A DNA stretch of 64,000 nucleotides, taken from contig NC_043001.1 of assembly GCF_006345805.1 (NCBI RefSeq), positions 102,982,001-103,046,000 on the forward strand, given 5' to 3'. Positions 18,231-60,750 of this stretch are shown piece by piece. A model generated the notes under the pieces. That model did not search any database. It was given only the letters and a program-made list of their open reading frames with translations, and was not told where the DNA came from. Positions within the stretch are counted from its first letter, which is position 1. Each line of letters opens with the position of its first letter. Source of the DNA: Octopus sinensis. Taxonomy: Eukaryota. The position numbers and the translations under genes were made by a program.

Positions 18231-20323
18231 GAAAAATTTTTGAATGAAATCTCATTATCTTCGACCTGGGTAATGCCATGTATTTCTGCTAGTATACATC
18301 ATCATCATCATCATCGTTTAACATCCGCTTTCCATGCTGGCATGGACTGAACGGTTTGACAAATGGCTGTCAAGCCAGAAGGCTGCAACAGGCTCTAATC
18401 TGATCTGGCAAGGGTTTTACAGCTGGATGCCCTTCTTAATGCCAACCACTCCGAAAGTGTGGCAGATGATTTAAGTACCACCAGTACAGGAGCCAATCAG
18501 GCAGTACTGGCATCAACCACACTCAACAAGTCTTTGCAAGCGCAGTTTATTGCCCAATGATTGAAGGGTAGTCTTAAATGGGCTGGTTATACTGCACTGG
18601 CATAATTTCATAGGTTAGACAGTTCAATGGAAAGTGACAAGTGAGGAGATTGCACCAAACCCTGCTGTCTACTTGGACATGGTTTCTGCAGCTGGATGTC
18701 CTTCCCAATGCCAACCACTTTAAAGAGCATACTGGGTCCTTGTTACGTAGCACAATCAACAGTGAGATCACCAAATAACTTGCAAGACAAGAGCCTTCAA
18801 CTGAGTAGGGGAGTAGTATTGAGGGACAGAAAAAAAGAGTCTTGCATTAGAGGGAAATATTGCTGCCTCAGACGTTGAGATAGGGGAGGGTGAGAGAGGA
18901 GAGAGAAGACAGCGAAGATATGAGAGTGAGTGGACTGGGAATTAGAGAGGGTGAATGGGGGAGTTCATGAGATTGCAAAATGTAAAGTGGCAGATGGAGG
19001 AGGGTGTAATGAGTGGGTAAAGGTAGAGGGAGGGAGATGGGAGAATGTCTTTTAGAAGAGATTCAACAGGGGCATATTATGCAGGTAGGTACAAAAGAGA
19101 GTGGGGGAATGCAGTGGGTGGTGGAAAGGGAGTGTTGGGAAGATGAGTTGAGGGGGGGGGGTCTGTTAGGAGGACAGATTTTTGTGCAGGAAGGGAGGAA
19201 GCGGAGCACAGACGTAAAGAACATACCTTTGTGGCCTCAACTTTATTTAGTTAGATGAGTCTTCTCAAGCATAGCAAATCAATAATTTCTCATGAGACAT
19301 TTTGTGCTGTATATTAATGTCCAAGTGTACACAAACATGTTAAACAGATAGCACACAATTATACCTCAATCAAACCTGCTTAGTACACCTCTATACTAGA
19401 AGAGACACTAGCTAGTGTTTCCACCAGTAAATATTAAAGTGGAAAAATCTAATGTAGAAACAAAGAGCACAGTATGTATATTGTATTGTAATCAATATAT
19501 TACTGAATAATAATCACAGAGTAGACAACATAGTCACAGAAATTACCCCAAGGCTTTCATATTCAAAGGACTCTGGTATACACGTTTGTGTGTAACAGAA
19601 TGAAACTTGAAGTAAAAAATTTCTCTGTAATTTTGTTATAGATTATTGTAAAAATGTTCACATACTAAGAAAATATATAAGGATAGACAAAGATTAAAAG
19701 GAATAGTGGCAGTAAACAAAAAAGAGATAGAGAGAGAGAAGGGAGTAGGCCATTAAAAAACACTACCTTGTAGTGTAAGATTTATAAAAACACAATCTCA
19801 TAATGAATATAAATCAACTTTCTAATTGAATTATGTAGTTGAAATCTTCAATGATAAAAGATGTATAAAGCCACAATATGCAAAAAAAAATAAAAATTGG
19901 AATTTTTAAGTACTTTCTAGATAGCATAAATTTTAATAATTGCTTTCATTTAGTAAAAAGTTACATACAGTTACATAAGCAGCTTTTTTCACTATAATGC
20001 ATATAGCTGCCTGCAGGTAACTTTTTTTCTATCTTCTAAAGGTAAATACCCCATCTTTACTGTTTTCACAGCTATACTGTGCTTGAAATTTACTTTTTCA
20101 TCTGTAAAATACCAACATATTCAACACTTTCAAAGTCTGTTTATAAAATGTTCTCATAGGCGCAGGAGTGGCTGTGTGGTAAGTATCTTGCTTACTAACC
20201 ACATGGTTCCCATTGTGTGGCACCTTGGGCAAGTGTCTTCTACTATAGCCTCAGGCCAACCAAAGCCTTGTGATTGGATTTGGTAGATGGAAACTGAAAG
20301 AAGCCCGTCGTATATATATATAT

Positions 20324-20870: not shown

Positions 20871-22749
20871 AAAGGATGTTCTTTACATGCCACCAGCATG
20901 GGTGCACTTGCCTTGACAGGTCCTCTCAAGCACAGCACATCGCCAAAGGTCTCGGTCAGCAGTCATTGCCTCTGTGAGGCTCAAAGTTCGAACATCATGA
21001 GCTACTAATGGCTCAGTGATGAAAACGACACAAACGACATTTTATAACACGTCTGGTACCTTCATGCAATTTTCATGTGTGTGAACATCATCGGCACCAA
21101 GCTAGGACAACTCATGAGACCAAGGTAACCTTTCTATAGCAAAATTAGTGCTGGTTACTTGTTGTTCCTGCCAGTGAGGTCTCATCAGTTTGTCGCATGG
21201 TTAGCCTTTAGGAGTTGCAGATGGTAGTCATTTTCAGTTGAATGAACTGGAGTTAAGTGCCTTAGGACAGAATGCAACACTTAAGTACGGGAATTGGAAC
21301 ACTGACCTTATGATTGTGAGCCCAAATACTAATCATTAACCTATGCACCTTGAAACTTTGGCCGAGTCTAAATAACGGTCAAAAAATAATTGCGTTCACG
21401 CGACATGCAAAAAATAGCTGCAAACTCTCCTTTGAAGTGGGGAATGATTACACACCCTTAAAAAGACAAGCTGGTAGTGGCTGGGATGTCATTGATCCAC
21501 ATATTCGCACAATAGGAGTGAAAACATTTGTTTTTAGGGGAAATAATAAGTTTATCAAGGGGAATAACTTTTGCATATGAAACTTGTATACAATAAGTTA
21601 TTATGGAATGTGTAAAGGGAGAGAACTTTTACTAAGTTATCTCCCTTGTGTGTAAAATATATAAAATTCATTATTATAAAGAATCTTTTTGCTCCAAAAG
21701 AGATTTTAGTCGCTTTCATATTTCAGTTACTTGTTTCAAGAAGATAAATATAATATTTCAGGGAATTATCATTCACCTTATAAATTAGTTATATAAAATA
21801 GATAATCATAGGCGCAGGCGAGGCTGCGTGTTAAGAAGCTTGCTTCCAACCACATGGTTCAGGGTTCAGTCCCCCTGTGCGACACCTTGGGCAAGAGTCT
21901 TCTACTATAGACTCAGACCGACCAAAGCCTTGTGAGTGGATTTAGTAGACGGAAACTGAAAGAAGCCTGTCCGGCAGTAGAAAACCATGTCAAACCAGAC
22001 TTGGGTTTGATGCAGCCTTCCAGTGTGCCAGCCCAGTCAAACCATCCAACCTATGCCAGCATGGACAATGGACGTTAAATGATGATGATGATGATATATG
22101 TATGTGTCTATGTTTGTTCCCCTACCATCACTTGACAACCAATGTTGGTGTGTTTATATCCCTGTAACTTAGCGGTTTAGCAAAAGAGACTGACAGAATA
22201 AGTACCAGGCTTACAAAGAATAAGTCCTGGGAGCGATTTCTTTGACTAATAGGCAGTGCTTCAGCATGACCACAATCAAAATGACTGAAACCGATAAAAG
22301 AATAACAGAATAATATAATATACACTTTGTTCTCCAATATATGGTTTATTTGCTGAAGTTGAAGACCAGTATTCAGCAAAAGCTGTGCCTATAGTATATT
22401 CGCTTCAAATTTTGGCACAAGGCCAGCAGTTTTGGGGGTAGGGTTAAGTTGATTACATCGCCCTGTGTGCTCAACTAGTACTTATTTTATCGACCCTGAA
22501 AGAATGAAAGGCAAAGTCGTCCTCGAGGGAATTTGAACTCAGAACATAAAGACAGAGAAAATGCCGCTAAGCACGTTAACAATTCTGCTAGCTCACCACC
22601 TTAGATATGCCTATAATATATTGTTATATGTGTATCTGCTGGAGCATTTATGAACATTTTCAAATAACACTTCTGTATGAGACTGATAGAAATGTGCAGA
22701 TAAATTGTAATTAAGGATACTTAGTTATCTGTTTTTCATAGATATATAT

Positions 22750-33540: not shown

Positions 33541-34630
33541 CAAACTGAACAACCCGAAGGAAGTACAGCAACTATTGTTGCAAAGAAGGTGAAAATAATA
33601 CCCAAACTGAACAACCTGAGGGAAGTACGGCAACTATTGTTGCAAAGAAGGTGAAAATAATGGCAACGAAAAAAGTGCATGAGCAATTGGCTGATAGGTG
33701 GGAGGAGAAACCTCTGCACGGCAAATATGTGGCCCGCAGCAAACAAGCTAAAGTTGACCAGAAGCAAACCCATCAGTGGCTACGGAGCTCAGGGCTAAAA
33801 GCAGAGAGCGAAGGTTTCATCTTGGCTGCTCAAGATCAAAGCCTATTAACCCGGAACTACCAGGCCAATGTGATGAAAAATGGAGCAGACCCAAAATGCC
33901 GATTCTGCAACGACATGATTGAAACAGTGGACCACCTAATCTCTGGATGTAAAGTCTTAGCACCAGTGGAGTATAAATTAAGACATGACAGAGTTGGCCA
34001 ATATCTACACTGGCTAATAAGTTGGCATTACAATATCAAAACTGCCGACAAGTGGTATAATCACCACCCTGAAGCTGTAACTGAAGGAGAAAATGTAACG
34101 ATTCTGTGGGACTTTCCAGTACATACAGACCGAACCATCAAAGCCAATAAACCAGATATTGTTGTGAAAGACCAAAACAATAAAGTTTGCTTATTGATCG
34201 ACATGAGCATCCCCTGTGATCATAATATCTCGGCGAAAGAGTTTGACAAGCTCAGAAAATATAAAGACCTACTCATTGAAATTGAGAAAATGTGGCATCT
34301 CAAGGCGGTTACAATACCAGTTATCGTAGGAGCACTAGGAATGATCAAGAAGGGAACCGAAAATTATATGAGAATGATCCCTGGCTTACCATCCCTGCAA
34401 GAAGTGCAAAAGATTGTCTTAACTGGTACATCACACGTATTGAGAAGAGCATTGTCGATGTGAGAACTATTACTACCCATGTATTTTAATTTAACTTAAA
34501 AAAAATTTTTTTAATGAACGAACCATTGAGTTTAGTTTAATGGCCTACCAATGTATACTATGAGTTTCTTTGCTAGGAGTCGGGAAGTTACTCGGCAAGA
34601 AATGGAAGCAAATTTGAAAGAGGAAAAAAA
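33540..34630 (+). mobile_element. 5'-truncated R4/Dong-clade non-LTR retrotransposon, intact C-terminal ORF, flanked by (AAT)n
   Basis: KPLHGKY...AAQDQSLLTRNY...CRFC...ETVDHLISGC...RHD...KPDIVV...LLIDMSIP...KYKDL...VIVGALG (CCHC + PD-D/E RLE). Confidence 0.92.
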
Positions 34631-49314: not shown

Positions 49315-50589
49315 TTATTATTATTATTATTATTGAATGAGAGAGCAGCGCATGTCATCAAAGTGACACTGGGGTAAAATATACGAAGCCCATTATACTC
49401 ATCATGACTACTTGTATGATAAGGGTACACCAGACGCATGCGTCACAACCATGTGTGCGCGACATGGTGATCTCATATCAAAATAAACAGCACATGACCT
49501 TGCAGGTGGGGCCCAGTTAGAATTTTCTTCTGGTCGAGTAACCCATCCCACTGAAAAGGTCTGTGAATAAGGATTGTTTAAGGATGTTGAACGAACCATT
49601 AATGTTTCCAGGGGTGAATTATTCAAACCTCTAAGAATTCCTCTCAACACATGGCTATGATGCTCCCCAACTACTTCTGCTTGTGATCAGAGATGCACAT
49701 ATCGTCAGCCACCAAGGGACATGCTCAACTGATTAAGGTCAAGCAGATTTGTGGTATTGAGCAGAATATTTGCTGTATCCCATCTTTTATACCAAGACAA
49801 AACAATGTACATGATAACACTTCCAATCAGTTAAGATCAGAAGCCATGAGAGCCACTGCCTGGTACTGCATCAGGGCATTTATTATTATTATTATGATTA
49901 TAAATGATATATTGTTAATAATGGAGATGGTTATGAAAGTAGTAATGATAGTGGTATTGTAATTAGTAACAGCATTGAAAGTAGTCGTTATTTTGAGTAA
50001 TGATGCCAGTGGGATTGGTGGTGACGTCAATGGTGGCCTGACACTGAAATTAGTTTAACACTAATTCTAAATCATGTATAACTGTCCTGGTTGAATAAAT
50101 ATATTGTGCTGGTGTGGTCATGTGATGCATATTAACAAGGACAGCTGTGTAAAGTAGTGCCAATCTCTAACTGTGGAGGGAATCTGTGGTAGAGGTAGAC
50201 TCAGGAAGACATGGGACAAAGCATGATCTTTGAATGTTGGGCCTCACAGAGGCAATGACTACTGACCAAGACCTTTGGCAATATGTTGTGCTTGAGAAGA
50301 CTTGTCAAGCTAAGGGAAATCATAGTTGTGGCTGATGCTGGTGTCACGTAAGTGGCACTCATGCCAGTGGCATGTAAAAGGCACCTTTTGAGCATTGTGC
50401 CTCATGGAGGCACAATGGCTGATGCTGGTGGCATGTGAAAAGCACCCTATGAGTGTTGGGCCTCATGGAGGCAATGACAAATGGCAGACCTTTGGCATTA
50501 TGCCATTCTTGAAAAGAGGACCCATCAAGCCATGAGAAATGATAGTCATGACACCGATATATTAATATTTCTTTTTTTTTCTCTTTCAG

Positions 50590-50898
50590 ATGGTACAACC
50601 ACAGTAACAATTGATGAGCCCCTGTATATTTACATACATAAAGGGGTCAAGTCTCAGATTCTAAAAGTTAACGATATTAATGAAGCAGAAAGCTTTCTTA
50701 TCTGTGAGGTGCACAGTGTTCGAGGCAATTTGACCCTTTCTTTGACTGAAGTACCTTTTGAGGATGAAGCTGTTAGAGGAAGAAATCTTGGTGTGGTTAC
50801 CATTCTGAAACCAGAACAAGACACGGCTGAATGGTTTCTCTATACAAACAACTTTACTGGTATTGCCTTGATTTATGTCAAGGCTTATACACAAAATG
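50590..50898 (+). CDS. TM7SF3: TM7SF3 exon 2
   Basis: Acceptor ttttctctttcag, open 309 nt DGTTTVTIDEPLY...VKAYTQN, donor G|GTGAGT, phase 1-1. Confidence 0.88.
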
Positions 50899-51090
50899 GT
50901 GAGTTCAGAATTATGTCATTGCTATTCTGTTGTATATAAAAGAAGGTAGACGTACATTGTATGACATCTGCTTTATAATGTTTTTCTTGTTATAGTTGAT
51001 GTGTACGTGTGTGAAAGAGAGAAAACAACGAATGCTCATCTCTAATGAATAACATAGACATGCAAGATGTTTTCTACTATATATATGATA

Positions 51091-51470
51091 CTAGCAGTAT
51101 CGACCGGCGTTGCTCGGGTTTGTAAGGGAAATAACTATAAAGCATTTTTAGAGAGTTATAGCCAAAAAATAGCAAAAAAATGGAAAAAAAATTATGGTAA
51201 ATTTTTTTTTAGTTAAAACGGTCGAGTTGCGTCCCCTAGACAGTCTGTGGTTTGTGTTTCCGATTCTCGACCCCATGTCGAATTTATCGATTTTTTTTTA
51301 GAACTGGGGGAACTTTTCAAAATTTTCTCTGTGTTAGTTTTGAATTATGACATTGGGCTATGTGTGTGTCAAGTTTCATCAGAATCGGTTGAAAGCCGTG
51401 GTCAGGGTGAGGGTACAACCTAACAGACACACAGAAACACACACAGACAAACTGCCGTTTATATAGAGAG
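51091..51470 (-). mobile_element. Non-autonomous Helitron
   Basis: 3' hairpin + CTAG at 51091; 5' TCTCTCTATATAAAC. Confidence 0.65.
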
Positions 51471-53494
51471 AGATATGTGTGTGTATATATGTACATATAT
51501 ATATATATTATATATATATATAAAATAATAATAATAATATAAATAATATATATATGCATATATTTTTCTATAGGCGCAGGAGTGGCTGTGTGGTAAGTAG
51601 CTTGCTAACCAACCACATGGTTGCGGGTTCAGTCCCACTGCGTGGCATCTTGGGCAAGTGTCTTCTGCTATACCCCGGCCGACCAATGCCTTGTGAGTGG
51701 ATTTGGTAGACGGAAACTGAAAGAAGCCTGTCGTATATATGTATATATATATGTGTGTGTGTGTGTGTTTGTCCCCCTAGCATTGCTTGGCAACCGATGC
51801 TGGTGTGTTTACGTCCCCGTCACTTAGCGGTTCGGCAAAAAAGAGACCGATAGAATAAGTACTAAAGGCGGTGCTCCAGCATGGCCGCAGTCAAAATGAC
51901 TGAAACAAGTAAAAGAGTAAAAGAGAGTATACATACATATATGTTAATACCTACATATATATGCATATATACATACATATATGTTAATACCTATATATAT
52001 ATGTATATATACATGCATATATGGGTACAGGACGTCAAAAAAACGAGAACATAAAAAAACAAAAACCTGGAAAATGAACTTTTTTTCAAACAACGAAAGA
52101 AACAAATAGAGAAATGAAGCAGGCAACATAAAGAACAATCCCTTCATCAAAGCCAAAGGATTGGTACTTTGACCAAATCCGAAACCTTGCAGATTGTTGG
52201 CAGAAGGTCGTGAAAAATGATAGTCTTTATTTTGAAGAATAGTTGTTGTTGTTTTTGAATAATTTCTTGTATTAAAGAGCATTATTTCAAGATGGTGCAC
52301 AAACTTTTTCTTCGACCTGATATAATACAGAATCATATCAGATGCTTGTTGCTTTTGATTTTGATGAGAAAATATAACTGTTAAACGATAAATTTTAGAT
52401 AGCACGATTTTTCTTTGTAAATCGAAGATCAACTTTCATAACCTCAGATCCAGTTAAACCTACAGTTTTTTGGAAGTGTAAAAAAAGGATGACATCGGGC
52501 TGTTGCATGGGTCACACTTCTTCTGCCACCAATATAAAGCATCTAAGGCGGCGAGCTGGTGGAAATGTTAGCACGCCGGGCGAAATGCTTAGCAGTATTT
52601 CGTCTGCTGTTACATTCTGAGTTCAAATTCCGCCCAGGTCGACTTTGCCTTTCATCCTTTCGAGGTCGATTAAATAAGTGCCAGTTACGCACTGGGGTCA
52701 ATATAATCGACTTAATCCGTTTGTCTGTCCGTGTTTGTCCCCTCTGTGTTTAGCCCCTTGTGGGTAGTAAAGAAATAGGTATTTCGTCTCTCTTTACGTT
52801 CTGAGTTCAAATTCCGCCGAGGTCAACTTTGCCTTTCATCCTTTTCGGGGTCGATTAAATAAGTACCAGTTACACACTGGGGTCAATATAATCGACTTAA
52901 TCCCTTTGTTCTTGTTTGTCCCCTCTTTGTTTAGCCCCTTGTGGGTAGTAAAGAAATAAATATAAGGCATCTTATTTTGATATTCGGTCTGAATATATAT
53001 TTATATCCCTGGCGACTGTATTTTTCTGCTGCTTGACCTCTTACACTTACCTAATTGACAAAATTAACGACAAGATGGTTGAAATCTTCATAGATACAGC
53101 TCATTAGAAAACGTTAAATTAATCGATCAATTCAACCTGGATACACATATTGCGAACTTAAGATTCTGGATTATTAAATATTCTGTATCATTGGAAAGAC
53201 TTTACATAGACTTTCTAGCAGTTGGGAGCTTTGTCAGTTTACTCGAGATCCCATTAATGTTAACGAATGGTGTTGGAACACAGGCTTATATATATTTAAA
53301 GAGAAATGGTTAGCTTTATGGTTCCATTGCCGAAAGCGACGGAGCCAAGTGATTCGTCGTGTACACAGAGTTGTCTCCCATCCATGCCTGGACTGAAAGT
53401 ATTTCCAGTTTTTAATGTTCTTTGCTTAAAATATTTTTAACAATAAGGCGCTAACATACATAATATGCACCTTGAATTTGGGGCTTTAATTGAT

Positions 53495-53807
53495 GCGAAC
53501 CACTCTAAGGGTGTAATCGGTGCTTCTACCAGCACAGGTGTGCCATTTGCGTGACACCAGTATCTGATTACGAGATAGAAAGAAAGTGGAATGTTAATCA
53601 GTGCCAAACTTAGAGCCGTTATACTTACTTTTGTTTTCCTCGCATTGCAACAAATCCGGGTTGATGACGGTCGGGACATAAGCAGCAGATGTCAGAATGC
53701 CATTTCTCGATTGTGTAACAACGAGATTCACCACTGCACTGATGCAAGGATAAGAAACCAGATTCAAATCGGATTTCTCAATGTTGTTGTTATGTATTAA
53801 CTTCACC
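53495..53807 (-). pseudogene. Inverted duplicate of TM7SF3 exon 4 plus ~135 nt of intron 4 (pseudo-exon in intron 2)
   Basis: 53629-53806 reverse-complements 57244-57421 with 4 substitutions; homology continues through GTAAGT into intron 4 to ~57560; acceptor not copied. Confidence 0.95.
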
Positions 53808-53911
53808 GTAGTTATTTTTGTTGTTGTTGTTGTTTACTTTGTAAAACAGTAAGGTGAGAGGGTTACAAGCACATCACCCTCTACGCACATTTTTCCCATC
53901 CACATCTTTAC

Positions 53912-54325
53912 CATATCATCATCATTGTTCCACCGTGGTCGAGACAATGGAATTTACTAAGTTACGCCAGACTTCACGGTCCATCATAGCATTACGGAGG
54001 TCCTGTTGCTGGATGCCTGTATCCCTGGAGATTACATCAGGGTAGAAGAGTGTGCGCCCTCTGGTATCGCGAGCAGATGGCTTCCAGAAGAGAAGAGTAG
54101 AAATTACTTCGCCTTCAGCTCTACAACAATGTCCAGCAAACTGGATTCTTCTACCTTTCACAAGAGATGTTACAGGTGGTAATTTCCCATATATTTGTAC
54201 TTTGGTTGGATGACGCTTCCACGAGAGATTTTGAGCTCTCATAAGGAGGCGAGTGTAGGTTCCATCCAACCGCCTCTCAAGCTGCTTTGATAACGTCCAG
54301 GTTTCAGAGCCATAAGGGGCCCTAA
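53912..54325 (-). mobile_element. RTE-X/Proto2-like LINE ORF2 C-terminus with (TGA)n tail
   Basis: YGSETWTL...LDGTYTRLL...RRIQFAGHC...MMDREVW. Confidence 0.85.
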
Positions 54326-54849
54326 CAAAATCCAATAATAGTTATAGAACAAATCTATCTAATTACTTGTCTCCTTCTAAAATCAGGCATAATTTAGCAA
54401 TTGATTGACTAACAACACCATTCTTCATCTTGAGTTTACCTGGTAGAATGTGTTTGTTAACTTGACATGGTCGAGGTGAGCTCTGATTGGCTGTATGCAA
54501 ATGAGTTCATTACTGGGGTCCAGAACTCTCGTGCGAAAAGATAACATTTTGCGAGCTGGCAAGCTTTAGTTTTATTGTTGGTGTTGGAGGACATAAACCT
54601 CATCAATGGATGGTCTCAGTTGTGATCTATGCAATTCAGTGGATGCTTCCTCAATGATGACAACCTTTGCAACAACAGTAAAAGGGGGAAAAAATTAAGA
54701 CAAAACAAATTGCTGATTAGTCCAAGTCATCTCTGACTTTGCTAGAAATAGCAGTCATAACTTAAATTGAATTTTACTGTCTTATAAAGAAGATACGTAA
54801 GTACATGTTTTTTCAGATAAGTCACAGACATTCACAATTGTAAGATTGA

Positions 54850-55085
54850 TTCCTGGTGGCCCCTTGTGTCCTTGGGCAAGATACTTTAATTTCATGTTAC
54901 TCCAGTCAGATCCGTTGATAGATATGAGGAGTAGCTGTATGTCAAAGGGCCAGCCTTTGACATCACATTCTGCGTCACACTGAAATCTTCCTGAGAACTA
55001 CATTAAGGATAAGCTTGTCTGTGGAGTACTCAGCCACATGCATGTTAATTTCACAAGCAGGCTGTTTCTTTGATTGGATCAACTT
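54850..55085 (+). mobile_element. Old SINE resembling Deu/Nin-domain SINEs
   Basis: TCCTTGGGCAAG...CAAAGGGCCAGCC...TGAGAACTAC...GTCTGTGGAGT.CTCAGCCAC; recognition from memory. Confidence 0.45.
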
Positions 55086-55134
55086 GAACAATCATTGTCA
55101 TAACCAACAGAGTAGCAATAAAGAAATGCATCTA

Positions 55135-55711
55135 TTGCCAGTTCCACCTGACTGGCCCCTATGCCGGTGGCACATAAAAAGCACCATTCGAGTGTGGTTG
55201 ATGCCAGTACGGCCAGACTAACCCCCGTGCTGGTGGCCCATAAAAAGCACCCACTACACTCTCAGAGTGGTTTGCATTAGGAAGGGCATCCAGCTGTAGA
55301 AACACAGCCAGATAAGATTGGAGCCTGGTGCAGCCTCCTGGCTTGCCAGTCCTCAATCAAATCATCCAACCCATGCCAGCATAGAAAGCAGACGTTAAAC
55401 GATGATGGTGATGATGATGTTGGTATTTGGCTTTTGAAGTCATGTACATGTCTGCCGGTGGCACATAAAAAGCACCCACTACACTCTCGGAGTGGTTGGC
55501 GTTAGGAAGGGCATCCAGCTGTAGAAACTTTGCCAGATCAGATTGTGGTCCTCAGTGTGGTCGATGCCAGTACGGCCAGACTAACCCCCGTGCTGGTGGC
55601 CCATAAAAAGCACCCACTACACTCTCAGAGTGGTTTGCATTAGGAAGGGCATCCAGCTGTCCTCAGTCAAAATCGTCCAACCCATGCCAGCATGGAAAGC
55701 GGACGTTAAAC

Positions 55712-55745
<34 letters not shown>
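55135..55745 (+). mobile_element. Two tandem RTE 3'UTR copies, the second carrying a templated insertion
   Basis: Two (GAT)n tails; 55554-55660 duplicates 55191-55297. Confidence 0.85.
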
Positions 55746-55747
<2 letters not shown>

Positions 55748-55867
55748 ATCAAAGTACTATCAAACTTTGCACATTCTTCTGTAACATCTACCATGTTAAG
55801 CCCCTAAATGACAGCGTGCTAGTTATTGTTAGTTAATCTTATTCTCTCTGTTATATTCTTTCTGCAG

Positions 55868-56151
55868 ATCCCTTACCTGGAGGTTGTAATCAAGAATTCA
55901 ACTTGGAAAACGATGCAAATATCAAAGTGAGATATCCCAAGTTACTGACAAATGTGGACTTCCAGTGGTCAAACGGTGGCTTCTCCCGATTAATGCTGCC
56001 ACCAAGCTGTGAAGATGTAGTAATGCAAACAAGCCTGCATTACCATGTTTTCGTCTATTTTATGAATGAAGTTCAAACAGATGACATGTCTGCCCTGCAA
56101 GCTGTTAAGAAAATGCTTTCGGTTGATGATATTCTCGAAACTGGAAGATAT
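55868..56151 (+). CDS. TM7SF3: TM7SF3 exon 3
   Basis: Acceptor tctgcag; DPLPGGCNQEFNLENDANI...PPSCE resembles the vertebrate TM7SF3 motif DPVPGGCNLEFDLDIDPNI as I recall it; donor GTAAGT; 284 nt, phase 1-0. Confidence 0.93.
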
Positions 56152-56789
56152 GTAAGTAGTTTTTATATTTTATTTCTTTCCAGCAAATTTTATAATTGTT
56201 TGTTACATGCGGTATCCATTATAAGCTATCATTGCTGGAGAAAGATGTAAGATTTCAGATATCAAAATCTATAGAACAAGGGATAAAATGCCTTTTTATA
56301 TTTACTCATGTACTAAGGTACGGGATCAATTCAAAGCATTGGAAAAGAAAAAAATAAGCATAACATTTAACAGAGTAATATAAATGCTCAAATGTTAATG
56401 ACAATTGGTGATTAAAGCAGTCTGAATAAATTATTGATAGAGATATGAAAGGATTGTTTTACAAAGAAAGAAAAAAAAAAGTGGAATAGACAGGACAAGA
56501 TCAGAGAGAAGGGGAGAGAGATGCCACAGAATACGTGACAGAAGAACTCAGGCAAATAAACAATAGCTAATAATAATAATAATAATGGTTTCAAAGTTTG
56601 GCACTAGGCCAGCAATTTTGAGGTGGGGAGGGGATAAGATGATTAAATTCACTCCAGTATTCAGCCGGTACTTATTTTATTGACTCCAAGAGGATGAAAG
56701 GCAAAGTCAACCCCAGTGGGATTTGAACTCAGAATATGATGATGAATGAAATGTGATTAACAATTTTGACAGCTCAATGCCTCCAATAA

Positions 56790-56891
56790 GTAATAATAAG
56801 TAATAATAATAATGATGATAATGATAATGATAATAATAATGATAATGATAATATAATAATAATGATAATAATGATGATAATAATAATAATG

Positions 56892-56930
<39 letters not shown>

Positions 56931-56964
56931 TAATGATAATAATAATAATAATGATATAATAATG

Positions 56965-56996
<32 letters not shown>

Positions 56997-57067
56997 AATA
57001 TAATAATAATAATAATAATAATATGATAATAATAATGATAATAATAATAATAATGATAATAATAATG

Positions 57068-57099
<32 letters not shown>

Positions 57100-57145
57100 A
57101 ATAATAATGATAATAATAATGATAATGATGATAATAATAATAATA
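56790..57145. repeat. (AAT/GAT)n microsatellite ~100 bp upstream of TM7SF3 exon 4; other AAT arrays at 33506-33540, 34630-34735, 35205-35270, 35810-35885, 36330-36380, 61759-61910
   Basis: Direct inspection. Confidence 0.97.
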
Positions 57146-57243
57146 AAGTAAGGATCAAATAAATAATGCATGCATTTATTGGCAAAATGACCCTCCCCAA
57201 ATAAAACAAAGAATTATATCTGTTTTGTTATGTATGATTGCAG

Positions 57244-57421
57244 GTGAAGTTAATACATAACAACAACATTGAGAAATCCGATTTGAATCTGGTTTCTTAT
57301 CCTTGTGTCAGTGCAGTGGTGAATCTCGTTGTTACACAATCGAGTAATGGCATTCTGACATCTGCCGCTTATGTCCCGACCGTCATCAACCCGGATTTGT
57401 TGCAATGCGAGGAAAACAAAA
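57244..57421 (+). CDS. TM7SF3: TM7SF3 exon 4
   Basis: Acceptor tgattgcag, VKLIHNNN...TSAAYVPTV...CEENK (TSAAY[IV]P motif), donor A|GTAAGT; 178 nt, phase 0-1. Confidence 0.9.
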
Positions 57422-58243
57422 GTAAGTACAACAACTCTAAGTTTGGCACTTATTAACATTCCGCCTTCTTTCTATCTCGTAATCAGATACTGGTGTCACG
57501 CAAATGGCACCCATGCTGGTGGCACATAAAAGCACCGATTACACTCTTGGAGTGGTTGGCATTAGGGAGGGCATCCAGCCATAGAAACCATGCTAAATCA
57601 AACAGGAGTCTGGTGCAGCCTTCCAGCTTGCCAGCCCTGGTCAAACTGTCCAACTCATGCCAGCATGGACAATGGACATTAAATGATGATAATGACGTAG
57701 TCAGTCCACCTGTGCATACCTTCCTTCTTGGGACACTTGTGAAGACCTGTTGAGGCAAGTGAAAATCAAACCAAATCAAAATCGATGAACATCAATGGAA
57801 TTTGTATTTTTGTGGTACCAGCACCGGTGGCACATAAGAAAATCATCCGAACGTGGCCATATCCAGTACCGCATCGACTGGCCTCCGTGCTGTGGGCATG
57901 TAACAAACACCATCCGATCATGGCCGTGCCAGCCTCGCCTGGCCTCCGTGCCGGTGGCACGTAAAAAACACCATCCGAGCGTGGCCGTTCGCCAGCCTTG
58001 TCTGGCACCGGTGTCGGTGGCACATAAAAAACACCATCCAAGCATGGCTGTTCGCCAGCCTCGTCTGGCACCTGTGTCGGTGGCACATAAAAAGCACCCA
58101 CTACACTCACGGAGTGGTTGGCATTAGGAAGGGCATCCAGCTGTAGAAACACTGCAAGATCTGACTGGCCTGGTGCAGCCTTCGGGCTTCCCAGACCCCA
58201 GTTGAACCGTCCAACCCATGCTAGCATGGAAAGCGGACGTTAA

Positions 58244-58274
<31 letters not shown>

Positions 58275-59250
58275 ATGATGACGACGGCGGGATCTCTCTT
58301 TTTCTTGCCACCCTTATTGTGTTTCATGTACCCTGCACAAATCACATCACCCAGTCCTTCTTTCTTATTGCTACAATCTTCTGGAGTTCCATCCCACCAT
58401 TTCTTTTCTGGCAACTGTCCAACTGCTGGTAAAGCGAACATCGACAACATCGATCTCAATACTCTGGGAAAACCTACAGACATCATTTGCATTGCCTTTC
58501 CACTCCCATCATTAACAGATTTGTTGTTGTGGACACTTATATCTTGACACACACACATTTTCATGTGTATCTGAGTAGGCAGAAAGGCAAACGGTCAAGA
58601 TAGTGAATACTAGTGAAATAGTTATTAGTTCTTTTATATCTTATTGAAACTGTTATTTAGTGTCTCTGACAAATGACAGCCATCTACCACGAAACAGCTG
58701 TTAGCATGATTGATGACCGTGTTGTATCATCAATTTATATGGGAATGAGACTGTTGTGTGACTGGCTATTGTAGTTCTTAGAATAATGTAAGGTGTGCTG
58801 GTGCCACATAAAAAACCCCCGTGCTGGTGCCACATAAAAAGCTCCTGTGCTGGTGTCACATATAATGCGCTGGTGCTGGTGCCATGTAAAAAGCACCCTG
58901 TCCACTCTGTAAAGTGGTTGGTGTTAGAAAGGGCATTTAGCTGTAGAAACCATGCCAAAACAGACAATTGGAGACTGATGCAGTTCCCAGCCTTAGTAGC
59001 ACCTGTCAAACCACCCCAGCTCATGCCAGCATGGAAAATGGATGTTAATTGATGATGATGATGATGATGTCAGTTGTCAAATATCAAACTGCTTATAATG
59101 TTCCCCAATTCATCATCATCATCATCATTTAACGTCCATTGTCTATGCTGGCATGGGTTGGACAAATTCTCTCCTTTATTTCAGATTTGGTATTTACTCT
59201 TTGAAACAAAAGAAAATATATCTTATTTCTTAATTGTTTTATTATTTCAG

Positions 59251-59337
59251 ATGATGTCTTAACCATTATAATTTCCTGTTTTACCATCCTCCTAGGATTC
59301 CTGTTGTGTTTCTTTGGACACAGGTATTTTAAAACAG
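59251..59337 (+). CDS. TM7SF3: TM7SF3 exon 5 (first TM helix)
   Basis: NDVLTIIISCFTILLGFLLCFFGHRYFKT (CFFGHR motif); canonical AG and GTATGT; phase 1-1. Confidence 0.93.
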
Positions 59338-60750
59338 GTATGTTTTCATTTATTGCCTCTTATTGTTATGCAATATTGTGCTGGTTCCTCATAAAAAGCA
59401 CCTGTGCTGGTGCCATGTGAAAAAAAAAAGACACCCAATACACCCTGTAGGGTGGTTGGCATTGGGAAGGGCATCCAACCATAGAAACCATGCCAAAACA
59501 GACAAATGGAGCCTAGTACAGCTCCTATGAAACCATCCAATCCATACCAACATGAAAAATGGATGATGATGATGACGATGACGACGACGATTGTCATGCA
59601 GTATAAATCACAATAATACGTCCTCTTTTAGAATTAGTTTTTGTATTTATATGCCTAAAAAATACTTATTAAAAAATTTAATTATTTTATGTTTCACAGG
59701 TGAACGCATGTCTAAGCGGTAATAAGTTTGCTTCTTAACCACAGGGTTCTGGGTTCAGTTCCACTACACGGCACATCAAGGAAGTGTCTCCTGTTATAGC
59801 CTCAGGCCACCCAAACTCTTGTGAGCGGATAAAGATGAATGCATATCCTTACTGATGTGCCTTGAATCTGCCTTTTGTAGATCTCTCTAATTCACTGGCA
59901 TGTGTTTATTTCTGGTCTTGTGGCATTAAGCATGTAGGGGACAGCAAATATTTCTCCTGGATAAGATGCCAAGGCTTTTTCACCTACCAAACTGAATTTA
60001 ATCCATACTGAATGTACCATTTGGTTTGGGCTGAATGTGCCATTTGGTTTGGGACATACAACCCATCGCCCTCTCCTGGCTCCCATCTTCTGATTCTTAA
60101 TTCTCACTCCACCAGTTTTCCTTTTTCTTTGTTTCCATGGTGAGGTAGTTAGAAGTTTTTTTTCTTGCTAATTTGATCTTTTATGCTTTTAATGTTTTTT
60201 CCTTTCTTTTCCTCCTGTAAAAATATATTGTTAATAAAATGGGTTTTTTTATTATAAATTTAATAGTAAAAAAAAAATGAAACAAAATAATGATAAAAAA
60301 ACGGACTTAAATATTGGTCTGGATGTAACTGACAATATCCGTTCCACCATACAGCTTGTATTAGAAATAATCATCTTTATTATTATTATTATTATTGCCT
60401 TTGCACAGCTTCTAAAGCTAAAGATGTACTACAGTGTCAGCTGTTTACTACCAGTGAACTAAGGTAACACCTCTTATTTTTCGAGCACCTTCCGGAGTAT
60501 TCGAGTGATTCCAAGTACTTCTCAAGATTTTTACTCACTGTTTCCAGGGCTCCGACAAATATTGATACTACTGCTACCTTTTTCATCAACCACAACCTCT
60601 TAACTTCCCAAGCTAACCAGTCATATCTCTCGACTTTTCTTTCTTCTTATTGCATACCTTGTTGTCAGCTGGGCATGCTATATTTATGATCCATATTATT
60701 ATTATTATTATTGGTAGTAGTATTTATGTTTGTTATTTTGTTATTTTCAG

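What the first reader, a model, noticed from the sequence alone, without database searches (positions are those of the whole stretch)
53495..57562. Inverted copy of TM7SF3 exon 4 inside intron 2: a built-in duplex partner looping out exon 3
Seen: 53495-53807 is a reverse-complement copy of 57243-~57560 (exon 4, its GTAAGT donor and ~135 nt of intron 4). The exon part has 4 differences in 178 nt (TGT/TGC, GTC/ATC V-I, AGT/AGA S-R, GCC/GCT); the first ~90 nt of intron has about 6. The copy stops within 1 nt of the acceptor, so the polypyrimidine tract and AG are not covered. It is diverged, so not a simple assembly duplicate. Established: long intramolecular exon-intron duplexes are ADAR substrates (editing-complementary sequences), coleoid cephalopods recode mRNA extensively, and flanking inverted repeats promote back-splicing. 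Inference: the pre-mRNA can form a ~310-bp duplex closing a ~3.4-kb loop that contains exon 3, making exon 4 a candidate hyper-edited exon. A57433 and A57434 (intron +12/+13) would face C, a mismatch ADAR favours. An editing partner made by duplicating the host exon itself, not from a transposon, is what is unusual.
Basis: partly seen in the sequence, partly recalled or inferred. Interest (0 to 1): 0.85.

Follow-up and report, generated by a model that had tools for sequence, protein, structure and literature searches.

The report
Inverted exon-4 copy in octopus TM7SF3
An octopus TM7SF3 gene carries, in an upstream intron, a real but young backwards copy of its own exon 4 that could pair with that exon in the unspliced RNA; whether this pairing has any effect was not tested, and the sequences show no sign that it is selected.

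Summary
Window 53493-53807 is the reverse complement of 57243-57562: 315 aligned bases, 17 mismatches, 2 indels. These are the only two copies in the 2.72-Gb genome. The gene is a TM7SF3 orthologue. The original arm covers exon 4 (57244-57421), its GTAAGT donor, 62 nt of unique intron and 79 nt of a SINE head. The copy lies in intron 2, and exon 3 lies in the 3.4-kb spacer.

An independent Octopus vulgaris assembly has both arms with identical junctions, so this is not an assembly artefact. The held O. bimaculoides locus and a distant cephalopod show only the normal exon, and O. bimaculoides differs at the left junction.

The arms differ by 2.2-5.4%, against 8.7% between species, so the copy is a young insertion specific to the vulgaris lineage. 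Its right end abuts an internal point of a truncated TIR element. There is no target-site duplication, and microhomology is 1-2 nt (possibly 4). This fits DNA repair or a replication template switch.

Folding predicts a 304-bp duplex (-550 kcal/mol) that persists in a 4.4-kb fold. No compensatory changes or reduced divergence were found. Editing, circRNA and splicing effects are plausible but untested.

The parts
53493..53807 (-). Inverted copy (arm A). On the minus strand it reads exon 4, then the GTAAGT donor, 62 nt of intron 4 and 79 nt of SINE head. It lies in intron 2 of TM7SF3.
   Evidence: orthologous copy in O. vulgaris at L034:18327-18646
57243..57562 (+). Original arm (arm B): the last G of the acceptor AG, exon 4, the donor, and the start of intron 4 including the SINE head.
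57244..57421 (+). TM7SF3 coding exon 4: 178 nt, aa 239-297 of P0003. It has 52 A's, and 42 of the possible A-to-G changes are nonsynonymous.
57422..57427 (+). Exon-4 5' splice site GTAAGT, inside the predicted duplex.
57484..57700 (+). SINE in + orientation with a GAT-rich tail near 57690. Only its first 79 nt (to 57562) were copied into arm A.
   Evidence: (families D3, D6, D9)
55868..56151 (+). TM7SF3 coding exon 3, inside the 3435-nt spacer between the arms.
50590..50898 (+). TM7SF3 coding exon 2. Intron 2 runs from here to exon 3 and holds arm A.
53808..53916 (+). First piece of a truncated TIR element (TE-A). It starts at an internal point, equivalent to L027:1501. The left ~209 bp of the element, including one TIR, are missing and arm A sits in their place.
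54310..54556 (+). Second piece of TE-A, with its right TIR at 54474-54539.
53915..54314 (-). Young 400-bp repeat (TE-B), 94-96% identical to many genomic copies, nested inside TE-A. It holds an open frame of 139 aa with no Pfam match.
53486..53494 (+). Left junction. Orthology with O. bimaculoides intron 2 runs to 53494 and homology with arm B starts at 53493. The overlap is 2 nt (AT), or possibly ATTA in the ancestral state.

Best explanation
This is a young, lineage-specific structural variant. About 320 bp of DNA (exon 4, its donor, 62 nt of intron 4 and the first 79 nt of a SINE) was copied in inverted orientation into intron 2, 3.4 kb upstream. This happened in the common ancestor of O. 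vulgaris and the window's species, after the split from O. bimaculoides. The copy replaced target DNA: at least the left 209 bp of a TIR element. It has no target-site duplication, and microhomology at the junctions is only 1-2 nt (possibly 4). The most likely origin is therefore end joining or a replication-based template switch (FoSTeS/MMBIR-like) at a break in or beside the palindromic element. That origin is inferred, not shown. As a consequence, any TM7SF3 pre-mRNA that still holds intron 2 when exon 4 is transcribed can form a ~304-bp near-perfect intramolecular duplex. The duplex covers all of exon 4 and its 5' splice site. In coleoid tissues rich in ADAR, the expected outcome is promiscuous hyper-editing of both arms and some interference with use of the exon-4 donor. 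This outcome rests on established properties of long dsRNA and is not shown here. The sequences look like a neutral or slightly harmful by-product, not a selected editing device.
For: The repeat is real and unique. The gene and exon map are established. O. vulgaris (GCA_951406725.2, L034) is collinear over 51955-57693 and has both arms with identical junction sequences. The held O. bimaculoides sequence (L032) and a distant cephalopod (L033) show exon 4 once only, and O. bimaculoides orthology ends exactly at 53494. The arms differ by 7/320 in O. vulgaris and 17/315 in the window, against 8.7% between the window and O. bimaculoides over the same stretch. Only 4 arm differences predate the vulgaris/window split, and none is in the exon. 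The right junction abuts an internal point of TE-A, and the missing half of TE-A is nowhere in 124 kb. Duplex: cofold -550 kcal/mol with 304 intermolecular pairs, all kept in the MFE fold of 53300-57700; O. vulgaris gives -595 kcal/mol and 313 pairs; exon 4 alone is not unusually structured, z = +1.15. There are no compensatory changes. The copy changed at 5/236 sites between the two species in its exon plus unique part, against 0.78% in the rest of the block, so there is no sign of constraint. Zhang et al. [quoted passage not shown]
Against: No RNA data could be examined, so duplex formation, editing and splicing effects in vivo are inferences. Intron 2 of O. bimaculoides holds a 4.8-kb run of N (L032:20290-25088), so absence of a copy there is not strictly shown. 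The right junction coincides with the exon-4 acceptor to within 1 nt, which a random DNA break would do only about 1-2% of the time. That coincidence hints at an RNA-templated origin or at a filter by selection. Both species have kept both arms intact.
Confidence: 0.7

Rival explanations
1. Selected editing-complementary sequence. The copy is maintained because it directs ADAR recoding or hyper-editing of exon 4, or tunes TM7SF3 output, in the vulgaris lineage.
For: A long near-perfect exon-intron duplex is predicted. Both arms are intact in two species. Of 52 exon A's, 42 would recode. There are several A-C mismatches. Two of the four amino-acid differences between the two species lie in exon 4, two codons apart, and the O. 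vulgaris G-to-A change places an A opposite a C of the copy.
Against: The copy is young. No compensatory change exists, and every arm difference weakens pairing. The exon part of the copy evolves at or above the local neutral rate. No copy is seen in the held O. bimaculoides locus or in the distant cephalopod. A 300-bp perfect duplex gives promiscuous rather than site-selective editing. The duplex also masks the 5' splice site of a 178-nt exon whose skipping shifts the frame.
Confidence: 0.1
2. Inert variant. Intron 2 is spliced co-transcriptionally before exon 4 emerges, or helicases prevent pairing, so the duplex essentially never forms and nothing follows from it.
For: Exon 3's acceptor lies 2.06 kb after arm A, and exon 4 starts about 1.1 kb after the end of exon 3, which gives time for intron 2 to be removed. 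The annotated proteins of both species include a normal exon 4.
Against: The net gain from pairing is about -400 kcal/mol, and all pairs persist in the global fold. An excised intron-2 lariat could still pair in trans. From general knowledge, nearby inverted repeats a few kb apart in introns are routinely edited in many animals (context in PMC9989829).
Confidence: 0.2
3. RNA-templated origin. The insert is a cDNA of a TM7SF3 pre-mRNA fragment captured at a double-strand break, or made by a retroelement reverse transcriptase. This would explain why it begins at the first base of exon 4.
For: The junction is exon-exact to 1 nt. The locus is transcribed and surrounded by retroelements, including TE-B and a zf-RVT frame at 33549-34463. 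Absence of a TSD together with a target deletion fits endonuclease-independent capture.
Against: No normal splicing intermediate has a free 5' end at the start of an exon while keeping the downstream intron. There is no exon-3 sequence, no poly(A) or element tail, and the other end lies mid-SINE. The adjoining TE-A sequence is an internal point of a DNA element, not the end of an RNA.
Confidence: 0.12
4. The main effect is on splicing topology. The arms bring the exon-3 acceptor near the exon-4 donor and promote circRNA (exons 3-4) or exon-4 skipping followed by NMD.
For: The geometry fits: arm A is in intron 2, 141 nt of arm B are in intron 4, and exon 3 is in the loop. Exon 4 is 178 nt, so skipping shifts the frame.
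Against: The back-splice donor is itself buried in the duplex. No transcript evidence was available.
Confidence: 0.1
5. Assembly artefact, such as a fold-back chimera or a misplaced haplotig.
For: None beyond the general risk in long-read assemblies.
Against: The arms are 5% diverged and 3.4 kb apart. The junctions are unique. The same structure occurs with the same junctions in an independent assembly of another species.
Confidence: 0.02

Closest known systems
Editing-complementary sequences (ECS) of ADAR targets, e.g. GluA2 Q/R intron 11, 5-HT2C exon 5/intron 5, Drosophila syt-1 (from general knowledge)
   Same: An intronic sequence pairs with an exon in the unspliced transcript, so editing has to precede splicing.
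   Different: Known ECS are short, imperfect and conserved, and they give site-selective editing. This element is a 304-bp near-perfect copy of the exon itself. It lies two introns upstream, is young, shows no constraint, and has not been shown to be edited.
Nearby inverted repeat pairs (inverted Alu/SINE pairs) as hyper-editing substrates; Zhang et al. 2023, PMC9989829
   Same: Two young inverted copies a few kb apart in one transcript, forming a long near-perfect dsRNA. The distal 79 nt of each arm is in fact SINE sequence.
   Different: Most of each arm is a coding exon, its splice donor and unique intron rather than a dispersed repeat. Hyper-editing would therefore hit coding sequence and a splice site.
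Intronic complementary sequences that promote back-splicing (circRNA biogenesis; from general knowledge)
   Same: Inverted arms flank an exon and close a loop.
   Different: The downstream arm includes the exon and the donor that would be used, so the site is sequestered rather than merely brought near.
Hairpin-RNA loci born by inverted duplication of gene fragments (Drosophila hpRNA; plant proto-MIR genes, Allen et al. 2004; from general knowledge)
   Same: Origin by inverted duplication of part of a protein-coding gene, giving a long perfect hairpin.
   Different: In those cases both arms sit in a separate locus and act in trans through small RNAs. Here one arm is the working exon and pairing is in cis within the pre-mRNA.
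Templated inverted insertions with target deletion from FoSTeS/MMBIR or end-joining repair (from general knowledge)
   Same: A short locally templated segment, inverted orientation, 1-4 nt microhomology, loss of target DNA, no TSD, and a breakpoint at a palindromic element.
   Different: Nothing differs in kind. The only unusual point is that one breakpoint coincides with an exon border.

Membership tests
ADAR editing-complementary sequence (ECS) | Intronic sequence complementary to an exon of the same pre-mRNA | tested here: met
   304 predicted intermolecular pairs at -550 kcal/mol, kept in the 4.4-kb fold
ADAR editing-complementary sequence (ECS) | A-to-I editing observed in the paired exon | not testable with these tools
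   No RNA reads were available. The supplements held for PMC8382921 do not mention the gene. PMC5499236 is not held. No RNA-derived protein fragments of exon 4 are in the protein collection.
ADAR editing-complementary sequence (ECS) | Evolutionary conservation of pairing, shown by constraint or compensatory changes | tested here: not met
   The copy is present only in the vulgaris lineage. There are no compensatory changes, and the copy evolves at or above the local rate. The test is weak because the element is young.
Inverted-repeat hyper-editing substrate | Two inverted copies within a few kb in one transcription unit, forming long near-perfect dsRNA | tested here: met
   Arms are 3435 nt apart on the gene's strand and 95% complementary, with a longest uninterrupted helix of 102 bp
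Inverted-repeat hyper-editing substrate | Clusters of A-to-G mismatches on both arms in RNA | not testable with these tools
   No RNA data
circRNA-promoting flanking complementary sequences | Arms lie in the introns flanking the circularised exon(s) | tested here: inconclusive
   Arm A is in intron 2. Only 141 nt of arm B are in intron 4; the rest is exon 4 with its donor.
circRNA-promoting flanking complementary sequences | Back-splice junction reads | not testable with these tools
   No RNA data
Retrocopy / LINE-mediated transduction | Target-site duplication, a poly(A) or element tail, and a spliced or collinear RNA template | tested here: not met
   There is no TSD, the target DNA is deleted, and one end lies mid-SINE. 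The apparent flank match at 54315 is explained by TE-B being nested in TE-A.
TM7SF3 (host gene) | TM7S3_TM198 domain with the two N-terminal Ig-like TM7SF3 domains | tested here: met
   PF13886 scores E = 9e-26 on P0001. PF25992, PF27919 and PF13886 hit the window's own protein P0003 and its orthologues. Sources name relatives TM7SF3.

The most novel reading that the evidence does not exclude
The inverted exon copy is a newborn editing-complementary sequence. In O. vulgaris and its sister species it would cause exon 4 of TM7SF3 to be heavily A-to-I edited (recoding, and/or damping expression through loss of the splice donor). In O. bimaculoides, where no copy is seen, exon 4 would not be edited this way. 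That would give a dated natural experiment on how a coding exon acquires an ADAR substrate by self-duplication rather than through a transposon.
Probability: 0.25. Interest if true: 0.7.

Novelty: new variant of a known kind. Interest (0 to 1): 0.4.

Why it matters
If the duplex forms in vivo, this locus shows an exon gaining a long dsRNA partner in a single mutational step. Its age is known, and close relatives with and without the copy are available. That would allow a direct test of how quickly a new duplex turns into coleoid recoding, and at what cost to splicing. If nothing happens at the RNA level, it is a useful negative control: a perfect 300-bp exon-intron complement that the cell ignores. 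Either way the DNA event itself is ordinary, and the present evidence does not show a function.

Tried and rejected
(1) LINE 3' transduction or a chimeric retrocopy. I first read 53808-54314 as one retroelement ending at the exon copy, with a GGGGCYYTAA 'TSD' at 53480 and 54316. One search showed that 53808-53916 and 54310-54556 are one TIR element (TE-A) split by the nested repeat TE-B, so the flank match is TE-A sequence and not a TSD.

(2) TE-A's natural end lies at 53808. Rejected: full copies continue a further ~209 bp.

(3) Inversion of the spacer, with the missing half of TE-A next to exon 4. It was not found in the window or in 60 kb downstream.

(4) Lower divergence of the exon part as a sign of selection for pairing (4/178 against 13/137). 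With O. vulgaris and O. bimaculoides used to polarise the changes, the excess comes mainly from about 9 private changes in the SINE part of the window's copy. The copy's exon part is not slower than unique intron.

(5) Arm-specific acceleration (2.5% against 0.78%). The unique left flank is just as diverged, so the effect is regional.

(6) A Pfam PF13886 scan of the genome to place the gene found only a single-exon paralogue on C10, so the exon map was built by tblastn instead.

(7) A search for published editing sites in this gene found nothing accessible.

(8) A search for RNA-derived exon-4 peptides found nothing.

(9) Rfam on 50000-60000 gave no match.
Full report
OBSERVATION. The inverted repeat is real. 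The repeat finder reports arms 53535-53807 and 57243-57515: 273 nt, 96% complementary, 3435 nt apart. A 36-nt extension covers 53493-53528 / 57527-57562. A gapped alignment joins these into 315 aligned positions with 17 mismatches and two indels. In the whole 2.72-Gb genome (window = C5:102982001-103046000) the exon-bearing piece occurs at these two places only. Bases from 57484 onward match many loci at 97-100%, so that part is the head of a dispersed SINE.

THE GENE. The exon-4 peptide matches residues 227-284 of a 579-aa protein, P0001, which carries the TM7S3_TM198 domain. The window's own 588-aa product (P0003) and its orthologues carry PF25992, PF27919 and PF13886. Sources name more distant relatives 'transmembrane 7 superfamily member 3'. 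tblastn and the splice signals give exon 1 from 44758, exon 2 at about 50590-50898, exon 3 at about 55868-56151, and exon 4 at 57244-57421 (178 nt, donor GT at 57422). Further exons run to the end of the window and beyond. Only exon 4 has a second copy. The copy therefore lies in intron 2, antisense to the gene, and exon 3 is in the spacer.

SURROUNDINGS AND JUNCTIONS. The left flank (53200-53492) is unique in the genome. The right flank is not. 53808-53916 and 54310-54556 are two pieces of one ~550-bp element with ~70-bp terminal inverted repeats (TE-A; a full copy is at L027:1292-1843). A young 400-bp repeat (TE-B, 53915-54314) splits the two pieces. The exon copy abuts TE-A at an internal position. 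The left ~209 bp of TE-A are missing here and from 60 kb downstream. An early idea that the copy was a retroelement transduction flanked by a target-site duplication was dropped once this nesting became clear. At the left junction, orthology with O. bimaculoides runs to 53494 and arm homology starts at 53493. That is a 2-nt overlap, or four nt if the O. bimaculoides state is ancestral. At the right junction one G is shared. TE-A copies and the acceptor both read GCAG at that point, but the product keeps only the G.

OTHER SPECIES. The O. vulgaris chromosome assembly (GCA_951406725.2, L034) is collinear with 51955-57693 at 96.6% identity. It contains both arms (copy at 18327-18646, original at 22006-22325, 3359 nt apart), and both junction sequences are identical to those in the window. 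This rules out an assembly artefact and places the event before the two species split. The O. bimaculoides locus (GCA_001194135.2, L032) shows exon 4 once, in the normal orientation. After the position matching 53494 it continues with 433 nt that are absent from the window. Its intron 2 then has a 4.8-kb run of N, so absence of a copy there is likely but not proven. A distant cephalopod (L033) has a compact 13.5-kb gene with one exon 4.

AGE AND SELECTION. A five-way alignment shows only four differences between the original and copy lineages that both species share: 57429, 57433, 57524 and 57526. None is in the exon. All other differences are private to one arm of one species. The arms differ by 7/320 in O. 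vulgaris and 17/315 in the window. The window and O. bimaculoides differ by 8.7% over the same stretch, and the window and O. vulgaris by about 1% over the block. The duplication is therefore about twice as old as the vulgaris/window split and far younger than the bimaculoides split.

The apparent deficit of exon differences (4/178 against 13/137) mostly reflects about nine private changes and a 5-nt deletion in the SINE part of the window's copy. The exon and unique parts of the copy changed at 5/236 sites between the two species, which is not slower than surrounding intron. No compensatory pair of changes exists, and every difference weakens pairing. The arms look faster than the block average (2.5% against 0.78%, Fisher p = 0.0003). 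However, the unique left flank is equally diverged and the stretch 54955-56954 is almost invariant, so this is regional heterogeneity and not a property of the arms.

RNA POTENTIAL. Exon 4 with its flanks is not unusually structured on its own (z = +1.15). The two arms co-fold at -550 kcal/mol with 304 intermolecular pairs, about -400 kcal/mol net of self-folding. All 304 pairs persist in the minimum-energy fold of the 4.4-kb segment 53300-57700. The O. vulgaris arms give -595 kcal/mol and 313 pairs. In the gapless core there are nine mismatches, five of them A-C, and three G-U wobbles. The longest uninterrupted helix is 102 bp. The duplex covers all of exon 4 and its GTAAGT donor but not the acceptor, the polypyrimidine tract or the branch region. 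Exon 4 holds 52 A's, and 42 of the possible A-to-G changes are nonsynonymous.

INTERPRETATION. What is shown: a real, unique, inverted copy of exon 4 and the start of intron 4, shared by two sister species, joined to a truncated TIR element, with target loss and minimal microhomology, and with strong duplex potential. What is inferred: an origin by end joining or replication template switching at a break near the palindromic element; duplex formation in those transcripts where intron 2 outlasts transcription of the next ~1.4-1.7 kb; and promiscuous ADAR editing and interference with the donor as consequences. The editing inference rests on established behaviour of long dsRNA. Zhang et al. [quoted passage not shown] No evidence for a selected function was found. 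Given the element's youth, the tests for selection have little power in either direction.

UNEXPLAINED. One breakpoint coincides with the exon border to within 1 nt. No normal splicing intermediate has a free 5' end there while keeping the downstream intron, so an RNA template is not an easy explanation. A chance hit at about 1-2% or a GCAG microhomology followed by a 3-bp loss remain possible. Two of the four amino-acid differences between the two species' proteins fall in exon 4, two codons apart. In O. vulgaris, one of them places an A opposite a C of the copy arm.

LIMITS. No RNA reads, editome tables or population data were reachable. The species name of the window's genome was not given. 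From memory, its assembly statistics resemble O. sinensis, and its TM7SF3 protein is 99% identical to that of O. vulgaris.

Noticed in passing
window 53808-53916 + 54310-54556; full copy at L027:1292-1843: A ~550-bp non-autonomous element with ~70-bp terminal inverted repeats and a (GTT)n stretch, present in many copies at 80-95% identity. In the window it is truncated on the left and split by a younger repeat.
   Followed up: partly
window 53915-54314: A young 400-bp repeat, 94-96% identical to well over 40 genomic copies, nested in the TIR element with a CCATA-like duplication. Its 139-aa open frame has no Pfam match.
   Followed up: partly
window 56785-57146: A 362-bp (AAT)n microsatellite of about 122 units, ending about 100 nt upstream of the exon-4 acceptor. 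It is also present, but shorter, in O. bimaculoides.
   Followed up: no
window 57901-58098 and 58794-58898: Tandem arrays (63-nt and 26/52-nt periods) built from the head motif of the local SINE family (GGTGGCACATAAAAA...). Intron 4 is packed with these SINEs in both orientations, which gives further short inverted pairs (e.g. 55670-55728 / 59110-59168).
   Followed up: no
window 51955-57693 vs L034:16834-22456: Divergence between the window's species and O. vulgaris is very uneven: 25 mismatches in 52955-53954 but 2 in 54955-56954. This suggests ancestral haplotype structure or a local rate difference.
   Followed up: partly
window 57345 and 57350 (P0003 residues 272 and 274): Two of only four amino-acid differences between the window's TM7SF3 and that of O. 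vulgaris lie two codons apart in exon 4 (S/R and G/D). The copy arm keeps the ancestral state at both sites.
   Followed up: partly
window 53493-53545: The SINE part of the window's copy has about nine private substitutions and a 5-nt deletion, against one change in the O. vulgaris copy. Possible causes are ectopic conversion from another SINE or a polishing error.
   Followed up: no
L032:20290-25088: The O. bimaculoides chromosome assembly has a 4.8-kb run of N in TM7SF3 intron 2, exactly where an orthologous copy would be sought. Several other gaps lie within the same gene.
   Followed up: yes
window 33549-34463 (+): A 304-aa open frame with a weak zf-RVT match (E = 2.5e-4, below the Pfam cut-off), probably a retroelement remnant in the large intergenic or intron-1 region upstream.
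   Followed up: no
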